Assembly: GCF_001194135.2 (NCBI RefSeq)
Contig: NC_068992.1
Span: 47,471,349-47,505,107 of the forward strand
Source of the DNA: Octopus bimaculoides
Taxonomy: Eukaryota
Length of the DNA: 33,759 nt
Direction of reading: 5' to 3'
Shown one piece after another: positions 1 through 22,972 of the stretch. Position 1 is the first letter of the stretch. The number at the start of each line of letters is the position of its first letter. A program made the position numbers and the translations under genes. The notes beneath the pieces are model-generated. The model did not search any database. It was not told the DNA's origin and worked only from the letters and a program-made list of their open reading frames with translations.

Positions 1-236
1 CTATGTGTGTGTGTGTCTTTAAGTCTCTGTGTGTTCCCCACCACCGCTTGCCAACCGGTTTTGATGTGCTTACATCCTCGTAACTTAGCGGTTTGGCAGA
101 AGAGAACCGATAGAATAACTACCACGTTTTTTTTTTAATATGTCCTGGTGTCGATTTGTTCGACTAAAACCATTCAAGGCGGTGTCCCAGCATAGCCACA
201 GTCAAATGACTGGAACAAGTAAAAGAGTAAAGAATG
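1..236 (+). mobile_element. 3' half of composite SINE family A (continues upstream of the window)
   Basis: (TG)n, then ccccaccaccgcttgccaaccgg...gtaacttagcggtttggcag...gtcaaatgactggaacaagtaaaagagta. This is the reverse complement of 2703-2900 and 20638-20810. Confidence 0.85.
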
Positions 237-384
237 AAAGAACATGCAAACCGTCCAATAGAAAATTACATCGGTAAAGGACCGGATTTCAGTTATATTC
301 CGTTTTGTTTATACAAAAGTGTTGTAGATTTGTTGAAAGCTTTTAGTTTGTATTTTAAAGATTGTTGAACCTTTTTCGTATTTT

Positions 385-532
385 GTGGATGTGAGGTAAG
401 AAGTTTACTCCTCAACCACATGGTTCCGGGTTCAGTCCCACTACGAGGCACCTTGGGCGTGTGTCTTCTACTACAGCTCCGGGCCGATGAAGACCTTTTG
501 AGTGGATTTCGTTGACGGAAACTGAAAGAACC

Positions 533-573
<41 letters not shown>

Positions 574-660
574 CGCATAAATACATACATGTGTGCGTGT
601 GTACGCATAAATACATACATGTGTGTGTGTGTGTGTGTGTGTAGTGTGAACGTTTGTATG
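385..660 (+). mobile_element. 5' half of SINE family A (tRNA-like head, CORE-like segment) plus (TA)/(TG) microsatellite; 3' half absent
   Basis: B-box-like ggttcagtccc, accttgggcgtgtgtctt and ...gacggaaactgaaagaa match the reverse complement of 2970-3128. They are followed by (TG)n with a duplicated unit cgcataaatacatacatgtgtg. Confidence 0.85.
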
Positions 661-661
661 T

Positions 662-801
662 ATATATAGTAATCTGGCTAAAGGTGGCATAAAGCGATTG
701 CATAGACATGACTTGCCAACACCAGTGAGGTCCTTTTCCTTATTTCCTAACAGTGCAATAGCTGTAATGTTAAAGATCCTTGGTTCTGTCCTTTTAGCCA
801 T
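662..801 (-). pseudogene. RhoGAPp190: Decayed N-terminal fragment of p190 RhoGAP (ARHGAP35/ARHGAP5 family) GTPase domain
   Basis: ATG at 801 reads MAKRTEPRIFNITAIALLGNKEKDLTGVGKSCLCNRFMPPLA. After a 1-nt shift it reads DYYI. The family consensus from memory is ...NISVxGLSGTEKEKGQxGxGKSCLCNRFxRPxADDYxxDH. GKSCLCNRF is exact; the GLSGTEK segment is altered; the sequence then runs into a microsatellite. Confidence 0.88.
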
Positions 802-1309
802 ATTAAGAAATGAGACCACATCATGCTGGTCTCTACTAGCACTACATTTTGTTAAGGGAACCCACTAATAATTGATTTCTTGCCTGCGTTATTCTGGTTA
901 AAATTTCTAAGGCATAGCTCTATGGTAGAAGAAAATATATAAAGAGTAATTTTACTTCAAAGTAGAAAAAAATTATAGTGAGTGAGATAAAGTTGTTAAT
1001 TGGGATCCTCTCCTATCTATTCTAAGATCAGCTAATAGCATGGTTCTCACATTCACCCTGGCAAAGGATAAAAAAGATCAGAGAATCTTCTAAGTTTTCT
1101 TTCACTTCCGGCGGTGTATATTTCACTTGTCACTGTTATTTATGACATATTTCATCTCAGTTACGTTTGTATGAATAAACGAGTGTATCTGAAGCATGTT
1201 TACTTCATGGCACCATCACAATTGTTCCTGCATTTCTACTGCTTTTAGTTTGTTTTTCTTTTTCTGTTTTTTAGCTACTATTTTCAGAAAGGTATATTTG
1301 TTACGCTGA

Positions 1310-1435
1310 ATCTCCCTGAGAACTATGTTAAGAGTTCGCATACCTGTGTGAAGTGCTCACATTAATTTCTCGAACAGGCTCTTTGGTTGAACGTATCAGC
1401 CGGGACACTTGTCGTTGTAACAGATAGAGAACCAG
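1310..1435 (+). mobile_element. 3' fragment of tRNA-derived SINE family C
   Basis: tctccctgagaactatgttaagagttcgcatacctgtgtgaagtgctcacattaatttctcgaacaggct...gtcgttgtaacagatagag aligns by eye with 17092-17224. Confidence 0.65.
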
Positions 1436-2702
1436 ATTCCATGATCAGTTCAGACTGGTACTCAGACTCTGAGGAAATCCAAACTCAAGAATTGAAAGTA
1501 GTCCCGGATAATTTCTCGTTTACTGTTAGTGAAAATGTTATTTATAAAGATACGATATTTACATTGATTTTTTTTAGCTAAAACTCTATGGCTACATTCT
1601 ACAGTACAATATAGCGTTGTGACATTCCGTAAAATATTTTTGTCATAGTAATAGAACTGTGTTTTTCAAAAAGTTCAACTCGTGAATGTACATGATTCAG
1701 CTGTGATGATCAATTTGTATAGAATGTTCTATTATTACAAGGTTGATACAATAATATGATTAGATGCACAGTAATGCATACAAACACGAAAAGAAAATAT
1801 TCGATCAAGTAATATAAAATTTAATATAAGCTGAATCTTCAATAACAGGCATCTGTATTTCGTGGTTCGCCTCATCGAGCGAAAGTGATTTACCACAGAA
1901 CATGCATACAACGTACATACAATCTGTGTTGCCTTAGGGATCATAAATTATTTGAAAGTAAATACGTAATACGATTGGTTATTGGAATGGATAGTATTAA
2001 GGTTTGTAAAGACGTTTTTTTATGAAAAGTGTTGCACAGCAGATGTATAAAGGATAGAATGAAAGACAGAGCAAAAGAGAAAAAAAAAAGCAGAAAGAAG
2101 AACATGAGAAAAAGAAATGAGAGAGAAACACAAATAATATTAATAAAGCGGCAACGGTGGTATAAATGCCGGCTTTAGCTACAGGAGAAAAGGAAAAGAT
2201 AATAATTTGCGAATATTAAAGACGTTACATATCTTTAGATTTAAAACATCTCTGTGTCAACAATGTTTTTGATTGAAAATTGAATATAGTGTGGACTTGG
2301 GTAGAAAGGAAAACGCAGGTAGTTTTTCTTTGGTAGGGGGTTAGTTGTTTTAAAGAGGGCTTATATAGCTGTTTGTTTGCAAATAGCAGTCAGTCGTGAA
2401 AGATAACGACATCGGTACAGAAAGTGAAGTTGTAGAAATATAACGAATAATAAAATTACATGTTGTGTTTATTAGGTATGTAAAGGACAACTGTGAAGTA
2501 TTGCATACGACTGAAGAACTTAATTAGAGAAACTTACGAAAATGTATTACTGTAGAAAGTATATAACAATGGCTGGAACAATGAGAATAACATGACTGTG
2601 TATATTCTTTTAAAAAATATACTCAACATAGAAAGATAATGATATAGCATGTTATAGTGTTTTGGGGAAAATATATGTATGTGCTTACAGAATTATGTAA
2701 AT

Positions 2703-2906
2703 TACTCTTTTACTTGTTTCAGTCATTTGACTGCGGCCATGCTGGAACACCACCTTTAGTCGAGAAAATTGACCCCAGGACTTATTCTTTGTAAGCCTAG
2801 TACTTATTCTTTCGGTCTCTTTTTGCCGAACCGCTAAGTTACGGGGACGTAAACACACCAGCATCGGTTGTCAAGCGATGGTGGGGGGACAAACACAGAC
2901 ACACAA

Positions 2907-2965
<59 letters not shown>

Positions 2966-3128
2966 TACGACGGGCTTCTTTCAGTTTCCGTCTACCAAAT
3001 CCACTCACAAGGCTTTGGTCGGCCCGAGGCTATAGTAGAAGACACTTGCCCAAGGTGCCACGCAATGGGACTGAACCCGGAACCATGTGGTTGGTAAGCA
3101 AGCTGCTTACCACACAGCCACTCCTGCC
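2703..3128 (-). mobile_element. Full-length composite SINE family A (tRNA head + CORE-like segment + internal (TA)n/(TG)n + 3' body)
   Basis: Minus strand: ggcaggagtggctgtgtggtaag (A-box-like), ggttcagtccc (B-box-like), accttgggcaagtgtctt (resembles the MIR CORE gaccttgggcaagtcactt), internal microsatellite, 3' end gtcaaatgactgaaacaagtaaaagagta. At least six related copies are in the window. Confidence 0.9.
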
Positions 3129-3479
3129 AGAACTTTTGTTCAAAGTAGTCGAAATGAATGTTATTTCCAAATATATTTGACAAAGTAGGGTATGCACTGC
3201 TATCTAGGTTTCTGGAAATGTCTGTTAGATGTTACAAAATTTATTGTGTTAGTCGTTAAACTAATACTTTTTAATGCATTTATTTACTAGTCACTTTTTA
3301 GAAAGATAAAATATAATTTACTCTATTGTCAATTAATTAATTAAAGTAACTATGTTTTTATATATTAGGTTACATCATATATTGTTATACTTCGGGATGG
3401 TAATTTTTTGCCAAATAAATACACGCACTGTATATTCTTTCTTCTCGCGTGTCTATAGACTAAGCAGAACAGGAGGAGA

Positions 3480-4750
3480 CACGTGAGATGGGGAGGCGCT
3501 GCAGAGGTCACAGGATTTGAGAGACAACAATGCTGCTGGCTAGAATACTTGCTTCGCGAAGTGTTTTGTCACAAGCTTTCAGGATTGTCTTTGTTAATTA
3601 GTGTCCCTGTTACCTCTTCTTCAGGTTACCTATCTTTTCTCTAGTTGCAAGACGATGGACTATAGGGATTGCCTAGAAATATCTTCACTCCAACACAGAG
3701 ATGACCGAAGAAGAGTTACTTCAATACTGAAGACGGACACCTTTCCATGCATTTGGATAACGCACTCCGCGATCATTGATGCTACTTATAATGAGAAAGT
3801 GACTTCATTTTGTCTTTTGTCTTCCTGGCCATTCCTGGAACTATATTGTTTTGGCAGCAGCAAAAGCAACAGCAGCCTTTCCTTTGTACCTGAAGGACCT
3901 GCTGTTGTTTCGACTCTTAATGTATGCTGTTTCGTCTACTTTTCACCAGTATAAAATGCTTTGAGATGATGTTTTACTTCAAGAAATGTAGCACTTTTCC
4001 TTTCTTTTCTACTCCACCTCTTGACCAATTTAAAGATCGAGTATATTTCCAGGATTACCTTCTGGCACTCGGATGTCATTAAGGTTACGAGATCGATCCT
4101 ACCCCATACTCACCCTTCCAAATCATTTCACAAATTTTCTTTCTCGCAGATTCGCAAATGTCATCACGGCTGTGTGTCTAGTTCCTCGCTCATACACGTG
4201 ACACTTACTCTCCCACATCAACGCTTAGTATACTGTAGCAGCTACTAATACTTCAGCTTGCACCATAGGAAAGCTGACTACATCATAACCACCTCCTCCT
4301 CTCCTATTTTTAGCATTAGTCTTATCATTCGGATAACTCTAGACTCTTCCGACGTATAAGCTCCCTGTCACGCATAGAATAATGCTTTTCTTTTTCATAT
4401 TCAAATCTCAAAACCCAGACTATTTTCCAGGGAGAAGCAGATACGTCGCTGTTTCCTTTAGTCACTCTCTTCAACAAAATATTCTGACTAAGAATTATGA
4501 CCTTACTTGACATATCGACTTATTGACCCTCTTTTACCTTGTCAAATCTGGTTCTTTCGAGTTCACAATTACACTAGCAAAGGATCTTGTATTCCGACAG
4601 CAGTAGCATTCCTATTCTTGCTATTCATATCACCGTCCACGAAGCTGTCATCACTGATTCATGACGACATTGTTAATATCCACAGTGATAACATTTATGT
4701 TATTGTACATAGAGTTAATATCTCACTTCACGTTTCTCAAAGAATCCTTT
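3480..4750 (-). mobile_element. Possible highly decayed non-LTR retroelement segment, family unresolved
   Basis: Higher-complexity sequence with broken minus-strand peptides (WK-VSVFSIEV, VGVKIFLGN) loosely resembling the C-terminus of a restriction-like endonuclease. Many stops and frameshifts. Confidence 0.3.
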
Positions 4751-5029
4751 GACTTATTTTTACAAAACACGAATTCTTGTCTATTTTTTTATTTTAAATA
4801 AGATTTTTTTTTTCTTTATGTAAAGTAGACATTTGTTTCCATTCCACTATGCACTGAAGATGTGTACATCAATCGCCAGTCTCCTTTTGTTATTAGCAAG
4901 GAAAACGTCATACTTAATTTTTTTTTTTTTTTTTTTTGGAGTGGTTTTTCATTGAGAAATTAACTAAGTTGAATTAACCAAAACAAAAGCAAAAACAAAG
5001 GTATTCAACATAAAGCAGTAAAAGAATTA

Positions 5030-5360
5030 AACAGAAAACCCAGTTTAAAACAGAAAGCCATTCACATGAGTACATAAGATCTAAGAGTATAAGATGAAGA
5101 ATTTATTTTAACTGATAAACGACAACAACAACAACAACAGATGCAATGAAACATATAATTCTAAACTTAAATCGGGACTAAAGAATGCTATGATAAAACG
5201 ATGGCAAGAAACACACCTACACGGCTATCACTAGAAAAAAATGAAACGGATAGAAGTAGATAAAGACATACAGGACATATAATGTGGAATTACCTAAAGG
5301 GGTCTGCAAAAGAAATTAGCAAGAATAATAATTTCTACAATAAATAATTTCCCCAAAAGA
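5030..5360 (+). mobile_element. Decayed R4/Dong-like non-LTR fragment (region C-terminal to RT)
   Basis: 5199-5231 reads RWQETHLHGYH, resembling the WxxKxLHGxY motif of R4/Dong ORFs. A-rich sense strand with in-frame stops. Confidence 0.45.
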
Positions 5361-5399
5361 GGAGAACTTCATTGGACTGCTTGTGGGAACGTCACAAAA

Positions 5400-6300
5400 C
5401 CGCAATTGCGTTGACTACTAGTACAAGTGCCCTTTCTTCTTCCTGTCCCTTCAGTTTATTAGCGTGCTTAGAGTAGCCCCATTCACCTTGTCTATTTTTG
5501 CCGCATTCACCCACCTTTCAATAAAATTGTTGGAAAGGCGGCACTTCCCTCTCCATCCTCACTTCCCTTTTCAAGTGAAACTTGAGAAAGGTGATCTCAG
5601 CTCTACTGAGCTATGCATTTATCTCATGTGGATGTGTTTGGTGCCCCAGATTCGTCTGCTCTGTTTTCTTACTTTTTCTAGCTGAGGTTTTATATACAAC
5701 CGTTCTGGTCTTTGTTTCACGCTATATGGATTCCAGGATGTTGAGCGTGACGTTTCGTCTAGATCTAGTGAGGAAGTTTTCTCTGGCTCTCTCTAGTTTT
5801 CAGTGACTTCCTGTTTATATAAACATACAAGATTCGATGACTCCTGAAGACCACATAGCTATCCAGAAACTGTTCTTCGATGTAGGCGCAAAGATGAAAG
5901 TCATAAAATTGGTGCTTTTGCGTAGATAGCACAGTTATTGTACATGTGACAGTAGAAATCGTTTGGCGGGGAGATATTCTTCCTAGAAGAGGTATAAAGT
6001 CATTTCTTGTTTCTTCAGCATTCACCGCTTGCCATATTCTGCTCCAAAGTTGACGACAAACCAAGTATCATCGCCACCATCACCTTTGTTTGGCTGTGTT
6101 CCTCGAGTTCTGATGTTACACGCCTTGCGGCACCAGCCAATCAACTAGATTTTAGATAAATTTCTCAAGCAAAGAAGCATACTCTTTTATATGTTGCTAC
6201 AGTCATGCTTCTTTCCTTGAGTGAATACGACACCCGTCTAGAACATCATTTTGAGTTGTAATCCTAGCACTTTTTGCAGCTTACTTTATATCATGTAGGT
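5400..6300 (-). mobile_element. Decayed LINE 3' region, probably L1/Tx1-like
   Basis: Minus strand FLKFHLKREVRMEREV (5542-5589), then shifted NNFIERWVNAAKIDKVNGATLST (5463-5531). This resembles the C-terminus of cephalopod Tx1-type ORF2 as I recall it. Upstream peptides (TKVMV, DFIPLLG) are generically LINE-like, so the clade is uncertain. Confidence 0.45.
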
Positions 6301-6677
6301 CTGCGTTATGGTCACTAGTGTTTATACCATGCAATTTTCAGTTTTTAAATTTCAAATTGTATTCCCTGTGTTTGTAAGTGTATATGTTTACTTAATTGTC
6401 GTATTTATTATTTTTTTCTTTTAATAATTTCTTAGATGATTGTTGGTTATATTGTTTTCATAAACAGAGGCTCAATTTTGGTGTTAATTTTAATGTTAAA
6501 TTTGTTTCCAGTTGTTCATTTTTTTTCATATTCTCACAGCTATTAAGGCCCAAATGTCCCCAATGTAAAAGATATAAATTATTCAAAAGATCAAAAACAT
6601 CCAAGACCTATTGTTACAGCAGATATTTTAGCAATAATTTTCTTAAAATGTCTGGAATCGAAAAATCAATTGCGAAA

Positions 6678-6820
6678 CACGCAGGCGTGGCTGTGCGGTA
6701 AGAAGCTTGCCTCTCAACCACATACTTCTGGGTTCAGTCCCACTATGTGGCACCTTGGGTAGTTGTTTTGCACTACAACCTCGGACCGGTCAAAGCCTTG
6801 TAAGTAGATTTGGTAGATTT

Positions 6821-6890
<70 letters not shown>
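6678..6890 (+). mobile_element. 5' half of SINE family A plus (TA)n 6823-6890
   Basis: cgcaggcgtggctgtgcggtaagaagcttg...ggttcagtcccactatgtggcaccttggg...aaagccttgtaagtagatttggtagatttgg, then (TA)n. Confidence 0.85.
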
Positions 6891-6892
<2 letters not shown>

Positions 6893-7145
6893 AAATGGGA
6901 CAAGAACGCAGACAGACAGTAAGATGATACAAGGAAGGGACAACACATCCAGACAGACGATACAAAGAAAACAAGGACGGGTCATTCGGGGTTTTCTTTC
7001 CTCACTCGAGTTCCAGATCATCTTTGCAATTTCTGTTGGTTATACTCGATATTGCTCCAATCTGGCCAGCCCCAAGGAAAAACTAAGCTAAGAGCATTAG
7101 ATTCTCTAGAAGAAAGCATTAGATTCCTTGGAAGAAATCAACGAA
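6891..7145. mobile_element. About 255-bp insert (Penelope-like terminal fragment, tentative) between the two halves of a family A SINE
   Basis: Unique-looking block starting directly after the (TA)n and ending just before the (TG)n. It contains an internal duplication of agcattagattc. The family assignment is from recalled resemblance only. Confidence 0.4.
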
Positions 7146-7149
7146 TGTA

Positions 7150-7382
7150 TACATGTGTGTGTGTATCTTTGTATCAGTGTTTGTGCTCCCTTCCCATCAC
7201 CGCTTGACAACCGGTGTTGGTATTCTTATGTCCCCATACCTTAGCAGTTTAGCAAATAAGACAGAATAAGTACTAAGCTTTAAAAAATAAGCTCTAGGTT
7301 CGATTTGTACGACTAAACCTCCTTGAAGGCGGTGCTCCAACATGGCCGCAGCCAAATGACTGAAACATGTAAAATATAAGAG
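7150..7382 (+). mobile_element. 3' half of SINE family A
   Basis: (TG)n...catcaccgcttgacaaccggtg...gaataagtactaagctt...aaggcggtgctccaacatggccgcagccaaatgactgaaacatgtaaaa, colinear with 1-236. Confidence 0.85.
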
Positions 7383-7439
7383 GTAAAACTATTCGGTTAA
7401 GAAATTTAATTATTTGAAACCGCATAACGAAGCAGTAGC

Positions 7440-8600
7440 TCACTTAGGACAGCTAAATCTTTGTTACAACTATACAAAAGAATTGAGCGGATATAGATCA
7501 GAGCCAAATACTAACGGATGATAAATGCTTTATTTTGCAGCCTAAGCCCTTCGTGTAATATCATGGAACAGACTAACCAAACATAGCGAAAAAGTGATTC
7601 CAAGTATTGTTCAGAATTAACAAGCATTAAATGCACGAAGAGATTTCAAAAGCAGACACAAAAAAAGCTTTGAAGGAGAAAGACAAATAGAAAAGAGACC
7701 TAGAAAACAACTAAAGGATACTAATACGATACAGTCCTCTCTACGATCACAATGGAATATAACACAAACAAGAACCACAGCACAATATACTCTGCAACCC
7801 AATAGACATGAAGTAATAGTAAACAAGGAATAGACACCGCCAACCATAACACTGCAAAGTAGTGGTAATAAAAAACAACAATTAAAGTTAGCACAAATGA
7901 ATGCAGTCATTTAGAAAATATGGCGGACGGATTTGAATAAATGTTTGACAAGATAAAGTGTACACAAATGATAGACAGAAGAGAAACCATTAAAATATCA
8001 TACAAGATAACAGAGTTCAAACAAAGAAAGCTAACTGTGCATTAGAAATAATTATAGAGCAAATGAATGAAAAAAGATATAACAGGCTTTAACCAATACA
8101 CCACAGCGTATGTGGTAACCAAAGCAGTAGGCGTCATTATAAAAGATAAAACCAGATGAACTAAGACAGATCGTGTTTCGAAAATACTCAACAGGGGATA
8201 ACTTGTAAGAGAAAAGAGAAATAACTAGAATAAATGAAATTGGAAATAGGCTCAGAAAAGTGTTACCCCAGAAAAACAAAATTACATAAAGAAATTTAAA
8301 ATTTAAGACGAACGTGATCTTAAAAATCACAAAAGAATTATTAATTCAACAAAGAAATATCAATTCAAAGCTCGTGTTGTCGAAAATTCAGATTTGAGGA
8401 TAGATTCAAATAACTGAAATAAAATAAAACTTTGCAAGAACATAAAGAATTAAATAACAAAACGATTATTATTGTTCGGAATGAATCAACCAAGAGACAA
8501 TAGAAATATTTTGGTGAAAAATGTGGAAAGAGAATGAAACAAAGCGCCAATTAATTAAATAAAGCAAAAACAAAATTAAATCATGTAGCACTTCGAAATG
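7440..8600 (+). mobile_element. Decayed R4/Dong-like non-LTR retrotransposon ORF (region N-terminal to RT)
   Basis: Strongly A-rich sense strand. 8500-8530 reads IEIFW*KMWK, matching the FWxxIW motif before RT in R4/Dong. Near 7500, RSEPNTNG**M resembles SxPxxRGYxKRM. Multiple stops. Confidence 0.55.
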
Positions 8601-9051
8601 GAAAAAATCCCAGCGTAAACATAATGGAAGCCATGATCGTCAAAAGGTTTGAAAATGCCATGGATTAGATAAAATCCTACATGTCTGCATAAAACACATG
8701 TACATCTTACACCCACAAACTAGCAAAATTTTCATAAAATATTAAGGTATTCACTTTCTCAAATACCTGAGTTACTGGCAAAAAGATGGGTTAAACAGCC
8801 CTACAAACGGATGACCCTGAATACAGGCTAATCCCATGCCTTTCTTTCTTGCATAAGCGCCTAATATCAGTGAATAAGATGATATGTAACCTCCTCGACC
8901 GAAATAATGTTCTTTTTGGACGAATAGGGGTGAGTTGTGTAGTTTCCCTGGCAAACAAAACGAATTTAGAAGACTTCAGGTAGAAACAGTTGTCTTGATG
9001 TGGATGTAAAAATTATCATCAGTTATTATATAATTACACTGTTACCTTATG

Positions 9052-9290
9052 ACGGCGCGTGGCCTGGTGGTTAGGGTGCTGCGCTCACGAGTGTGGGTTC
9101 GATTCCTCGACTGGGTGGTGATTTGTGTTCTTGAGCAAAACACTTCATCTGAAGTTGCTCTACAATCACTTCAACATCTGACCTGTGGCACACCGTACAC
9201 TTGTACAGATAGTGTCGATTTGCTGGAAGAAGTTAGCTGGTGCGCAACGTAAACATTTAATCGCGATAAGCAAATCATCCGTGCAGAGTT
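9052..9290 (+). mobile_element. tRNA-derived SINE (family C-like head)
   Basis: ggcgcgtggcctggtggttagggtg (A-box), gggttcgattcc (B-box), gtgttcttgagcaaaacactt. The head is similar to 16907-17010. Confidence 0.75.
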
Positions 9291-9396
9291 TTCTGCAAAA
9301 AACTGCATAAACGACTTTTTTTTTAAATCGAGGGAATACCATTACAGTGTTACGAACCATACGTTGGTTAACGCTCAAGGATAATGTAGAAGCGTG

Positions 9397-9428
<32 letters not shown>

Positions 9429-9911
9429 AAGAATGTAGTATTCTTGTTGAGAGGTTTATACACCAGCAAAAATCAACGCGTTGTTTTTTTTTTCCCCCTC
9501 TCACCAACGTGAACAAGTCCGCTTGCAGTCAGTGGACAGTTTTCTGAAAAAAACAAGGCCTCAGAACTACAAAACATTGTTTTCATGGGTACTGCCCACA
9601 TCCTAAGATAAACATTATGAACCTGAAAACACTTGATTCTCTTAAAGCTCTATCAAAACTGAAATTTCAGATACACTATATCGTTGGTAATCATAAATAA
9701 CATCCACAGTGAAATGTCCAACTTTCTGTTACTTGAAATCTCTGGGTGAAACCTGGAACTACTCTTATAAAACAAAGCAACAATAGCGTAAATAGGAAAA
9801 GTTTTAATCGGTTTCCCATCTTCGATAAAATGGACAGTCAACTTGCCACTAGCAAATTACTTTCTTTTTAAGGCATTATATAATGAGGTGTGCTTTCTAT
9901 TTGATTTTCAG

Positions 9912-10040
9912 GAATCGGACAACAAGGAGAAGTTTTAGTAATCCATAATGTCAGCCGATATTGTGACGATGTGTATGAATGTGTAGCCAAAAATGGTATT
10001 CCACCCGTTGTTAGTCGAAAAATAAAAGTTTCCGTCGATT
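9912..10040 (+). CDS. Internal exon of a lachesin/DIP/IgLON-like Ig cell-adhesion gene (second half of an Ig domain)
   Basis: Acceptor ttgattttcag|, donor |gtaagt, 129 nt, phase 1/1. Encodes (G)IGQQGEVLVIHNVSRYCDDVYECVAKNGIPPVVSRKIKVSVD(F): LxIxNV...YxCxAxNG Ig motif. It splices in frame to 12386 (T+TT = Phe, giving VDFAPEV). Confidence 0.93.
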
Positions 10041-10043
10041 GTA

Positions 10044-10050
<7 letters not shown>

Positions 10051-10097
<47 letters not shown>

Positions 10098-10184
10098 ATC
10101 TTCGTTCATCAGTTCACATCAATAATGATACTGGTATTTACAGGGACAGCTTTCTTCTGTTCCAGTGGATCTAGCATTTCTCAG

Positions 10185-10258
<74 letters not shown>
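10051..10258. repeat. Poly-T (10051-10093) and (CT)n (about 10191-10258)
   Basis: Directly visible runs just downstream of the 10040 donor. Confidence 0.95.
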
Positions 10259-10261
<3 letters not shown>

Positions 10262-11159
10262 CCAATCTGCCTGCTCCTGCCTTGTTCAGACACTATGGTA
10301 CCTTTATTGATGAAAGGCACCATAAAGTCCAAGTAGATTTCTCTGCAGTAAGACACTCTTATTATTCTACTTTAATGCCGGTGTCCTTAAGGAGAAACTG
10401 AAAGTATGTTTGCAGAGTTTGTGCTACCTACCGCCCTAAAGTTTACACACAAGCACACAACCAACAATTCATTTGTCATCCACTCTGGCAATTTGGCCGA
10501 CCCAGCAGAACTGGGTGCTGCAAGAAGAATGTGAAAGCTCTATAATACAACCCGATTACAGACTTCAATGTCTGAGAAAATGTTCTGAAAATGAACTCAC
10601 CGTATTTTGCGCCGATATTTCGATGGTATGTCTACTTAAGTATTTTGCAACTCACCAGCATCAACTTGGTTTCGATGCTTGTCCTGGAAAATTATGTTAT
10701 TGACTTGAATGTCCGATGTGAACAACTTTTGGGGACGTAACACCAAGGAATATCAACCTTTGAGAGTTAGCAGAGTTTGATCTTTAGACGCATCTTTGTA
10801 TGAGCTGTGTACTCCTTATGAAAGGTTAGTTGATTGGTTGGTTGGTTGGCTGGTTGGGTGGCTGGCTGGTATGCACTTTTGTTAGTCTTGGTACTTATAC
10901 TAAACCCGAGTAGCTGTGAACGAATATCTGTACTACTGTATCACAGATTCTGGTACTCGATGAGAGCACAGTCATCTGCAAACAACGACTCCATTTGTTA
11001 TGAACCAGAGCCTCCTCAAGTTGAAGAAACTACAGCCTCCGTCAACAATTGCTCTGGCAAACATAACCTCATAGAATTGCTGTATTATACATGAACGTGC
11101 TCTTCTTGAGAAAAATAACATTTTTCATTTGCTCTACTACTCAGTAAAATAGTACAGCC

Positions 11160-12010
11160 TCATTACAATAACACAACTCATGTAATATATATTCTACACC
11201 ATCACCTCATAATCTCATCCATATTGTCACGCACTAACCACTACATACAGACCACAATGAACGTGGCTCTCACTAGCTTTTCCGTTTTGTTATGTTTTCC
11301 TAAAAACAGCTAACTTGCAAGCGTTAAAGGTTAATGTTAATGGTGTTGAACTAGCCAGTCTTCCTGGGAAGGTAGTGAACACACCACTTACTTCAGAAGA
11401 AATCAATAAACAAGAAAAATGAGAACGCTCTTACATAATTCAGGCAACATATGTGAACGTTCACCTAAAGCAGAAAAATACGACTTGCATATTCTACACA
11501 AACATTACAACTCACACATCACCGTGTATAGTGTACTTTATATTACAACAGTCACGTCACATGTTCTATACATTGCACCACCAATATAACACAAATCATA
11601 TAGTACATAACATGTGTTATCCAATGTTGTTTAACTCAGCTATCACTACAAATATCTTACACAATCACCTTTTGAGTTCCTGTAACACCACTCACAGGCC
11701 ATGTATGCTCTACACAATCCCTTTGCAATGATATAGCAAAACTCACACAACACACAATTTGTATAATCACTTCACTGAGTATATTACACAATGCACATAC
11801 GATGTATTGTGATCATGGCTTGATAAAACAATAACGCAATGCACACGTAACACATTCTACTCAATAACTTACCAATATTATTGAATAATTTGTAAATTAT
11901 ATATTCTAAAGAATTTCCTCGGAATACTTACATTTCCGATGGTACACATTATACACCATCACATCACAGTCTGATAACACAAAACACAAAGCACATTCTT
12001 CCACACATTC
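11160..12010. repeat. Degenerate C/A-rich dispersed minisatellite (motif approx. catattctacacaatcac)
   Basis: Motif variants at 11189, 11488, 11560, 11651, 11705, 11780, 11851 and 11945. Confidence 0.55.
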
Positions 12011-12385
12011 ACCTCCAAGTTCTAATTGAATAAAATAGATACATGTATATTTTGGTTATGTTTTGAGTTCATTTCCCTAGAAATGTTTGGCTTTTTGCCA
12101 ACGAACCGGTGTAATATATTTTTCTAAGTTATCAAAGAAACGCCTGTTCAGATTGTCACAAAATGGTGGGATTTATGCTGCCGATTACCTGTTCATTGTA
12201 TCCAGGAAAGTAGTCTTTATTGAAGAAAGAACCGTTTGTCTGATTTGGATGTTTGCAACACAATGAACCTCGCTAAATTCACCGAAGGACCAGTTGATAG
12301 TGCCGAACTGGTTAGTATAATATTTTAACGTGATTCATAGTGTTTACATTATATGAAACTTTCGTTTTATCTTTTTTTTTTCCAG

Positions 12386-12673
12386 TTGCACCAGAGGTAC
12401 AGTTACGGAATAAACGAATTGGTCAAGTTAGTGGGCGAGAAACTATTTTAGATTGTCGAATTACTGCTTCACCGCAGGGTGTGACAGTATGGATGCGAAA
12501 CGGAAAAGAACTTGTTAACAATGAAAAATACAGCATTGAAGTATTTAATGAAGGAGGACATACTATAACTCTAAGTCTACGAATAACTCAAATTAAGGCC
12601 AGTGATTTTGGAGAATATACTTGTCTAGCATCGAATCACCTCGGAAGAGACAGAGAGACGATGGTACTTTACG
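12386..12673 (+). CDS. Internal exon of the lachesin-like gene (complete Ig domain, third-Ig type)
   Basis: Acceptor ctttttttttttccag|, donor |gtatgt, 288 nt, phase 1/1. Encodes (F)APEVQLRNKRIGQVSGRETILDCRITASPQGVTVWMRNGKELVNNEKYSIEVFNEGGHTITLSLRITQIKASDFGEYTCLASNHLGRDRETMVLY, with Ig Cys, Trp and DxGxYxC. The layout parallels lachesin EFAPxI..RLGQ..LxC. Confidence 0.95.
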
Positions 12674-16439: not shown

Positions 16440-16497
16440 TGTATACATACATACATACGTATATACATATACATCTACCTATATATATATATATCTA

Positions 16498-20637: not shown

Positions 20638-20980
20638 TACTCTTTTACTTGTTTCAGTAATTTGACTGTGGCAAATCGACCCCAAGACTTATTCCTTGTA
20701 AGCCTAGTACTTATTCTATCGGGCTCTTTTGCCGAACCGCTAAGTTACGGGGACGTAAACACACCAGCATCGGTTGTTAAGTGATGGTGGGGTGACAAAC
20801 ACAGACACACACACATATAAATATATATATATATATACGACGGGCTTATATCAGTTTCCGTCTACCAAATCCACTCACAAGGCTTTGGTCGGCCCGAGGC
20901 TATAGCAGAAGGCACTTGCCCAAGGTGCCACGCAGTGGGACTGAACCCAGAACCATGTGGTTAGTAAGCAAGCTACTTAC
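20638..20980 (-). mobile_element. SINE family A copy (slightly 5'-truncated, internal deletion)
   Basis: Colinear with 2703-3110. It lacks the catgctgg...ttagtcgag segment and the A-box end. Confidence 0.9.
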
Positions 20981-22889: not shown

Positions 22890-22972
22890 NNNNNNNNNNN
22901 NNNNNNNNNNNNNNNNNNNNNNNNNNNNNNNNNNNNNNNNNNNNNNNNNNNNNNNNNNNNNNNNNNNNNNNN
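22890..22972. other. Assembly gap (N) at a (TA)n tract
   Basis: Run of N flanked by TA repeats. Confidence 1.

What the first reader, a model, noticed from the sequence alone, without database searches (positions are those of the whole stretch)
662..1111. Orphan antisense fragment of p190 RhoGAP GTPase domain, with upstream non-coding flank
Seen: the minus strand from ATG 801 encodes 42 aa including GVGKSCLCNRF, then DYYI after a 1-nt shift. Established: GKSCLCNRF is the P-loop-region signature of the N-terminal pseudo-GTPase domain of p190 RhoGAPs (ARHGAP35/ARHGAP5, fly RhoGAPp190), proteins of well over 1000 aa. Here only the first 140 nt are present. The normally conserved GLSGTEKEKG appears as ALLGNKEKD, there is a frameshift, and no donor GT follows. 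Upstream on the minus strand are a polypyrimidine tract plus CAG (tgatcttttttatcctttgccag, AG ending at 1058) and an ETS-type CCGGAAGTG (1103-1111). Inference: a dead duplicate copied together with either an intron end or the promoter/5' UTR, so not a classical 3'-anchored retrocopy. It probably lies antisense in an intron of the Ig gene.
Basis: partly seen in the sequence, partly recalled or inferred. Interest (0 to 1): 0.72.

Follow-up and report, generated by a model that had tools for sequence, protein, structure and literature searches.

The report
Dead octopus p190 RhoGAP gene fragment
This is a decayed, truncated copy of the first 0.44 kb (5' leader plus 47 codons) of the octopus p190 RhoGAP gene, lying away from the intact gene's first coding exon; it is an ordinary pseudogene fragment whose only unusual feature is how it may have been inserted.

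Summary
The minus strand from ATG 801 encodes MAKRTEPRIFNITAIALLGNKEKDLTGVGKSCLCNRFMPPLA. This is the N-terminus of p190 RhoGAP. The best match among 1.84 billion proteins is Octopus p190 (81% identity, E 3e-10).

An intact parent exon exists on octopus read-assembly contigs. It has 135 codons and is identical to the annotated proteins of three Octopus species. Window 664-1101 aligns to it at about 80% DNA identity, covering 288 nt upstream of the ATG plus the first 143 nt of coding sequence.

The copy is dead:
- It has nine amino-acid changes where cephalopods are almost invariant.
- It has a 3-nt deletion and a 2-nt frameshifting deletion.
- Substitutions are spread over all codon positions.
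- Codons 48-135 are missing.

- Homology starts exactly after an acceptor-like AG in the parent.
- A 15-nt direct repeat (650-664 and 1163-1177) brackets the block plus 61 extra bases.

Together these suggest a roughly 0.5-kb inserted piece, possibly from spliced RNA but with no poly(A). The ETS-like motif lies in the 61 extra bases, outside the homology. Placement in an Ig-gene intron is plausible but unproven. This is an ordinary relic of low interest.

The parts
664..801 (-). Decayed coding part. It corresponds to codons 1-47 of the p190 RhoGAP first coding exon. The ATG is at 801-799. A 3-nt deletion turns ACTGAA into AAT, a 2-nt deletion in codon 44 shifts the frame, and there are 15 point substitutions.
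802..1101 (-). Copied upstream non-coding flank, equal to parent L001 1920-2207. At least the proximal 78 nt are 5' UTR.
   Evidence: Alignments (p-distance 0.18). Similarity to the decapod mRNA L006 covers window 667-879.
1102..1162 (-). 61 nt of unknown origin between the homologous block and the right-hand direct repeat. It holds CCGGAAGTG at 1103-1111. It is a candidate for upstream 5' UTR exon sequence of the parent mRNA, or it may be filler DNA.
   Evidence: No match in L001-L006 or elsewhere in the window. Sequence printed.
650..664 (+). Left copy of the 15-nt direct repeat ACGTTTGTATGTATA, a candidate target-site duplication. It abuts the 3' end of p190 homology.
1163..1177 (+). Right copy of the 15-nt direct repeat, ACGTTTGTATGAATA (14 of 15 identical).
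385..649 (+). tRNA-type SINE (B-box-like GGTTCAGTCC) with an (AT)n(GT)n tail and a 30-nt tandem duplication. Its tail ends at the left direct repeat. It belongs to the flank, not to the p190 copy.
   Evidence: other copies at 2907-3121, 6687-6817, 20799-20980 and 23207-23356.

Best explanation
Window 664-1101 (minus strand) is a non-functional, decayed copy of the 5' end of the octopus p190 RhoGAP gene. It covers about 288 nt of 5' leader plus the first 47 codons of a 135-codon first coding exon. I infer that it arrived as a discrete piece of about 498 bp (665-1162) inserted next to a SINE tail, and that the insertion duplicated 15 bp of target. The most likely source is the 5' part of a spliced p190 transcript, reverse-transcribed by a LINE enzyme that primed internally, with no poly(A). 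The 61 extra bases would then be upstream 5' UTR exon sequence. Since insertion the copy has drifted neutrally. It cannot encode a GTPase-like domain and has no predicted function.

Shown: homology to p190, the intact parent exon, the decay, the truncation and the direct repeats.
Inferred: that the repeats are a target-site duplication, the RNA origin, and the identity of the 61 nt.
For: Identity:
- Best of 1.84 billion proteins is Octopus p190. The peptide also hits PDB entry 6d4g.

Intact parent:
- Contigs L001-L004 carry the ATG, 135 codons identical to the annotated protein, and a GTAAGT donor.
- The exon end is confirmed by a decapod mRNA whose similarity stops at L001 2611.

Decay:
- All Octopus species are identical over the first 60 aa, and cuttlefish differs at 2 positions. 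The copy has 9 amino-acid changes, a 3-nt deletion and a 2-nt frameshift within 47 codons.
- Its 15 substitutions fall 2, 7 and 6 at codon positions 1, 2 and 3. Octopus versus decapod shows 8 of 9 at position 3.
- Coding p-distance is 0.11 and upstream p-distance is 0.18, uniform along the flank. This fits a neutral copy set against a constrained parent.
- The copy shares 6 of 8 octopus-specific states, so it arose within octopods.

Discrete insert:
- The only direct pair matching at 14 of 15 or better in 2 kb brackets the block. None of 300 shuffles gives a bracketing pair.

RNA hint:
- Homology begins at L001 1920, immediately after an AG (1918-1919) that follows a strong pyrimidine tract.
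- The gene spans 180-205 kb, so an upstream UTR exon could lie far from the 1.9 kb of L001 that precedes the block.
- RTE-class LINEs are transcribed and polymorphic in octopus (PMC9115989).
Against: - No poly(A) or A-rich tail is present at either end of the insert.
- The 61 nt could not be matched to any p190 sequence, because the parent's upstream exon and mRNA 5' end were not retrievable.
- A first AG (1904-1905) lies 14 nt upstream of the AG that fits the boundary and would normally be the preferred acceptor.
- The repeat motif is microsatellite-like. Similar 15-mers occur at the ends of other microsatellites in the window, so chance is less remote than the shuffles suggest.
- The species of the window was not established. 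It was therefore not shown that the intact gene sits in the same genome.
- The window ends 660 nt downstream of the copy.
Confidence: 0.8

Rival explanations
1. The fragment arose by DNA-level duplication. A 0.44-kb piece of genomic DNA spanning the intron end or 5' UTR and the exon start was copied or captured during break repair or transposon activity. No RNA intermediate was involved.
For: The copy is colinear with contiguous parent genomic DNA for 431 nt. There is no poly(A). The copy is 3'-truncated, unlike LINE-made retrocopies. A Py-tract plus CAG lies inside the block and could be the real acceptor.
Against: Homology starts exactly after an acceptor-like AG in the parent. 15-nt direct repeats flank the block plus 61 unrelated nt. 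At least the proximal 78 nt, and probably about 100 nt, of the flank are transcribed 5' UTR in a decapod mRNA.
Confidence: 0.3
2. This is the true first coding exon, or an alternative one, of a functional p190 gene or paralogue. The indels would be assembly errors near microsatellites.
For: The ATG, its context and the GVGKSCLCNRF core are intact. The assembly is a draft with N gaps. The rest of a minus-strand gene would lie beyond the window's left edge.
Against: There are nine replacements at residues invariant across cephalopods, including G16A, S18L and G25D. Substitutions are not biased to third positions. The 2-nt deletion is not in a repeat run. Codons 48-135 of the same exon are replaced by unrelated sequence. 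An intact exon with different flanks exists on four independent octopus contigs.
Confidence: 0.03
3. The relic has been co-opted as a functional RNA or regulatory element. Examples would be an antisense transcript within the Ig gene, or a decoy carrying the conserved p190 5' UTR module.
For: The copy keeps the ATGTAG mini-uORF. It also keeps a 5' UTR hairpin with one G-C to A-T double change that preserves pairing.
Against: Divergence is the same in the conserved UTR module (0.179) and in the unconserved distal flank (0.184). One compensatory pair among roughly 14 substitutions is not unlikely; my rough estimate is p about 0.07. No Rfam family reaches threshold. No expression data are available.
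Confidence: 0.05

Closest known systems
Octopus p190 RhoGAP gene ('rho GTPase-activating protein 190/5/35' of O. sinensis, O. bimaculoides and O. vulgaris; orthologue of ARHGAP35/ARHGAP5 and fly RhoGAPp190)
   Same: The first 47 codons and 288 nt of leader are homologous at about 80% DNA identity. The GVGKSCLCNRF P-loop region is identical.
   Different: Only 438 nt of a gene spanning 180-205 kb and encoding 1450-1714 aa are present. The frame is broken, conserved residues are replaced, and no further exon lies in the window.
LINE-mediated processed pseudogenes (retrocopies)
   Same: It is a discrete insert flanked by a 15-nt direct repeat, which is within the usual size range for target-site duplications. 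It has a boundary at a splice-acceptor-like site and decays neutrally.
   Different: It has no poly(A), it is anchored at the 5' end and truncated at the 3' end, and the exon junction is not demonstrated.
Duplicated (non-processed) pseudogene fragments
   Same: It is colinear with parent genomic DNA including non-coding flank. It is truncated and decayed.
   Different: Such fragments do not normally carry flanking direct repeats or breakpoints at splice sites.

Membership tests
Functional p190 RhoGAP gene | N-terminal GTP-binding (class ii pseudoGTPase) domain of about 240 aa with an intact G1 region | tested here: not met
   Only residues 1-47 are homologous. GLSGTEKEKG has become ALLGNKEKD, and the frame shifts at codon 44. 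The domain definition comes from PMC6523970.
Functional p190 RhoGAP gene | FF, pG1/pG2 and RhoGAP domains downstream | tested here: not met
   tblastn with the 1649-aa and 1714-aa octopus proteins finds only 676-801 in the window. Sequence beyond the left edge of the window could not be examined.
Functional p190 RhoGAP gene | Purifying selection on the coding sequence | tested here: not met
   The 15 substitutions fall 2/7/6 by codon position and cause 9 amino-acid changes. True orthologues show 8 of 9 changes at third positions and 1 amino-acid change.
Processed pseudogene / retrocopy | Target-site duplication flanking the insert | tested here: met
   The repeat at 650-664 and 1163-1177 matches at 14 of 15. 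It is the only such pair in 2 kb, and 0 of 300 shuffles give a bracketing pair. Caveat: the motif is microsatellite-like.
Processed pseudogene / retrocopy | Exon-exon junction or absence of introns | tested here: inconclusive
   Homology starts right after an AG (L001 1918-1919) behind a Py tract. The parent's upstream exon could not be obtained.
Processed pseudogene / retrocopy | 3' poly(A) tail and 3' anchoring | tested here: not met
   No A-run is present at either end. The copy stops at coding nt 143 of an mRNA several kb long.
DNA-duplicated pseudogene fragment | Contains parent intron or intergenic DNA | tested here: inconclusive
   288 nt upstream of the ATG are copied. At least 78 nt of these are UTR. 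The status of the remainder is unknown.

The most novel reading that the evidence does not exclude
The piece is a 5'-anchored, spliced, poly(A)-less retro-fragment. An octopus LINE reverse transcriptase (for example RTE-type) primed by microhomology inside the p190 mRNA and copied up to its 5' end. That would be direct evidence that cephalopod LINEs mobilise host mRNAs in trans by internal priming.
Probability: 0.3. Interest if true: 0.4.

Novelty: new member of a known kind. Interest (0 to 1): 0.17.

Why it matters
It matters little on its own. It is one more gene relic in a repeat-rich cephalopod genome, and annotators should mask it so that it is not called as a p190-like gene or as an alternative first exon.

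If the spliced-RNA origin were confirmed, it would document trans-mobilisation of a host mRNA fragment by a non-L1 LINE system in a mollusc. It would also mark the transcription start and first exon of octopus p190.

Tried and rejected
- The word-indexed protein search with the 47-aa peptide found no candidates.
- Pfam gave no hit for the peptide.
- Exact-product look-ups of the window ORFs and the Ig ORF were not on record.
- DNA of the parent gene could not be fetched. Either the isoform was not on record or the gene range exceeded 100 kb.
- A scan of metagenome contigs for a 35-nt conserved exon string found nothing.
- The Rfam scan of 1-3300 gave only sub-threshold microRNA-family matches caused by microsatellites.
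- The decapod mRNA 5' UTR aligns only for about 78 nt (possibly 100 nt) before the ATG, so it cannot place the octopus exon start.
- No terminal inverted repeats flank the block, which argues against a DNA-transposon cargo.
- The search for further Ig exons upstream found only 9912-10040. That exon was seen by eye in the ORF print-out. tblastn with Ig queries and Pfam on plus-strand ORFs of 1-12385 gave no significant hits there.
- A chimeric query (p190 N-terminus plus the Ig exon) was used for the last protein search. It returned the parent exon ORF P0149. The best Ig match was only 91% identical and its introns do not align, so the species of the window stays unidentified.

Full report
**Observation**

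Reading the minus strand from ATG 801 gives MAKRTEPRIFNITAIALLGNKEKDLTGVGKSCLCNRFMPPLA, followed by junk that runs into a (CA)n microsatellite. PDYYI appears in the neighbouring frame. The peptide matches the N-terminal GTP-binding domain of p190RhoGAP in the PDB (6d4g E 1.9e-7; 3c5h E 6e-7). That domain is classed as a nucleotide-binding, catalytically inactive pseudoGTPase (PMC6523970).

An index-free HMMER search of 1.84 billion representative proteins found 13 hits. All those inspected are p190 N-termini, and the best is P0001 (81% identity, E 3.4e-10). P0001 is 'rho GTPase-activating protein 190 isoform X28 [Octopus sinensis]'. Near-identical proteins are annotated in O. bimaculoides and O. 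vulgaris.

**Source genome**

The window is draft eukaryotic sequence with two N gaps (22890-22972 and 32918-33166). It contains many microsatellites and several copies of a tRNA-type SINE. Together with the octopus-specific states described below, this indicates an octopod genome. I could not establish the species.

**The intact parent**

The p190 gene spans 205 kb in O. bimaculoides, 185 kb in O. sinensis and 180 kb in O. vulgaris. This was too long for its DNA to be served.

A protein search with the octopus N-terminus recovered P0149, a 153-aa ORF on four read-assembly contigs (L001-L004, runs SRR11869384-391). The contigs are identical where they overlap.

- In L001 the ATG is at 2208.
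- 135 codons are identical to the annotated protein.
- The exon ends at CAACTTG|GTAAGT.
- A decapod p190 mRNA (L006) aligns to L001 2130-2611 and stops exactly at that donor. This confirms the exon end and shows that at least the last 78 nt before the ATG are 5' UTR.

**Extent of the copy**

Window 664-1101 (minus strand) aligns to L001 1920-2350 at 79-81% identity (E about 1e-102 to 1e-108). That is 288 nt upstream of the ATG plus the first 143 coding nt. Nothing else in the window matches L001, the mRNA or the full-length protein. The copy lacks codons 48-135 of its own exon.

'No donor GT follows' is therefore expected and says nothing.

**State of the copy**

All Octopus p190 proteins are identical over the first 60 residues, and cuttlefish differs at two. 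Within 47 codons the copy has:

- nine replacements, including G16A, S18L, G25D and R40P;
- an in-frame 3-nt deletion (ACTGAA to AAT);
- a 2-nt deletion in codon 44 that shifts the frame.

Its 15 point differences fall 2, 7 and 6 at codon positions 1, 2 and 3 (my count from the alignment). Between octopus and decapod orthologues, 8 of 9 differences are at third positions and only one changes an amino acid.

The p-distance is 0.11 in the coding part and 0.18 in the upstream part. It is equal in the deeply conserved -78..-1 segment (0.179) and in the distal flank (0.184). This is the pattern expected when a copy drifts neutrally while its parent's coding sequence is held constant.

At 8 sites where octopus and decapod differ, the copy has the octopus state at 6. 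It therefore arose within the octopod lineage. Conclusion: this is a dead fragment.

**How it got there**

First, homology begins at L001 1920. This is the base after an AG (1918-1919) that follows the strongest pyrimidine tract of the region (ttttctttttttctcttctttcagattgatgctttaag|AAGAAAGC). The 14 nt between the first AG (1904-1905) and 1919 show no similarity to the window.

Second, a 15-nt direct repeat brackets the block. ACGTTTGTATGTATA (650-664) abuts the 3' end of homology. ACGTTTGTATGAATA (1163-1177) lies 61 nt beyond the 5' end.

- It is the only direct pair matching at 14 of 15 or better in 2 kb.
- About 0.29 such pairs are expected anywhere in the region.
- None of 300 first-order shuffles placed one in a bracketing position.

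I read this as a target-site duplication around a 498-bp insert (665-1162). The insert would consist of 61 nt of unknown origin plus the p190 block. At the 3' junction the parent (CATAT|GG) and the target (TATAC...) share a short AT run, which is compatible with microhomology priming or joining.

The most economical model is reverse transcription of the 5' part of a spliced p190 transcript. The 61 nt would then be upstream UTR exon sequence. Octopus genomes carry transcribed, polymorphic RTE-class LINEs (PMC9115989).

Caveats:

- There is no poly(A).
- The piece is 3'-truncated.
- The upstream exon could not be obtained to test the junction.
- The first AG would normally be the preferred acceptor.
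- The repeat motif resembles sequences at the ends of other microsatellites in the window (32863-32877 and 16442-16460).

I put the RNA origin at roughly even odds with a DNA-level fragment insertion.

CCGGAAGTG (1103-1111) is present once (0.06 expected). It lies in the 61 nt outside the homology, where the parent reads differently. It is not evidence of a copied promoter.

The Py-tract plus CAG (1058-1081) is inherited from the parent's tgatcttttatcag|GGTGAATG and lies 37 nt inside the block. Whether it is a used acceptor is unknown.

**Context**

On the plus strand, a SINE (385 to about 530) with an (AT)n(GT)n tail and a 30-nt tandem duplication ends at the left repeat. Positions 2-230 are another repeat copy. 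Everything between the fragment and the window edge is therefore repeat or unassigned sequence.

The plus-strand Ig gene has two exons in the window, 9912-10040 and 12386-12673. They splice in frame. The second matches the third Ig domain of Drosophila DIPs and of IgLON proteins. Because Ig1 and the first half of Ig2 were not found in 1-9900, they probably lie to the left of the window. That would place the fragment antisense in an intron. This is an inference only.

**Function and verdict**

No function is predicted. The conserved 5' UTR module (mini-uORF ATGTAG plus a 6-bp hairpin) survives in the copy with one pairing-preserving double change. The uniform decay and my rough chance estimate of about 0.07 argue against selection.

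This is an ordinary pseudogene fragment. It is a new instance of a known kind, with a mildly unusual insertion anatomy.

Noticed in passing
window 9912-10040 and 12386-12673 (+): Two exons of an Ig-superfamily gene splice in frame (…KIKVSVDF|APEVQL…). The second is most like Ig3 of Drosophila Dpr-interacting proteins and of IgLON proteins. A related exon (91% aa identity, 77% nt identity, introns unalignable) sits on contig L005 (ERR12921339).
   Followed up: partly
L001 2130-2207, L006 307-385, window 802-879 (-): The last 78 nt of the p190 5' UTR are conserved between octopus genomic DNA and a decapod mRNA. They contain a minimal uORF (ATGTAG) and a 6-bp hairpin (AGGCCA…TGGCCT) about 20-45 nt before the start codon. 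This may be a translational control element of p190 in cephalopods.
   Followed up: partly
window 385-649 (+); also 2907-3121, 6687-6817, 20799-20980, 23207-23356: Multiple copies of a tRNA-derived SINE (B-box-like GGTTCAGTCC) with (AT)n(GT)n tails. The copy next to the fragment carries a 30-nt tandem duplication (560-632). The microsatellites draw sub-threshold Rfam hits to the mir-297 and mir-466 families.
   Followed up: partly
window 2-230; also 2702-2921, 7153-7374, 20638-20819: A second interspersed repeat family of about 220 nt is present, ending in an A-run or (CA)n. Together with the SINE it accounts for most of the sequence between the p190 fragment and the window edge; 231-384 is unassigned.
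   Followed up: no
window 22890-22972 and 32918-33166: Assembly gaps (83 and 249 N) are flanked by AT/GT microsatellites. This marks the source as a scaffolded draft assembly.
   Followed up: no
proteins P0003, P0004, P0005, P0181, P0200 (other species): ORF read-throughs suggest that in some other animals the first p190 coding exon ends much earlier than in cephalopods (135 codons). It seems to end just after CNRF, after ADDY, or after HISVLSQ. The intron positions in this domain therefore vary among lineages.
   Followed up: no
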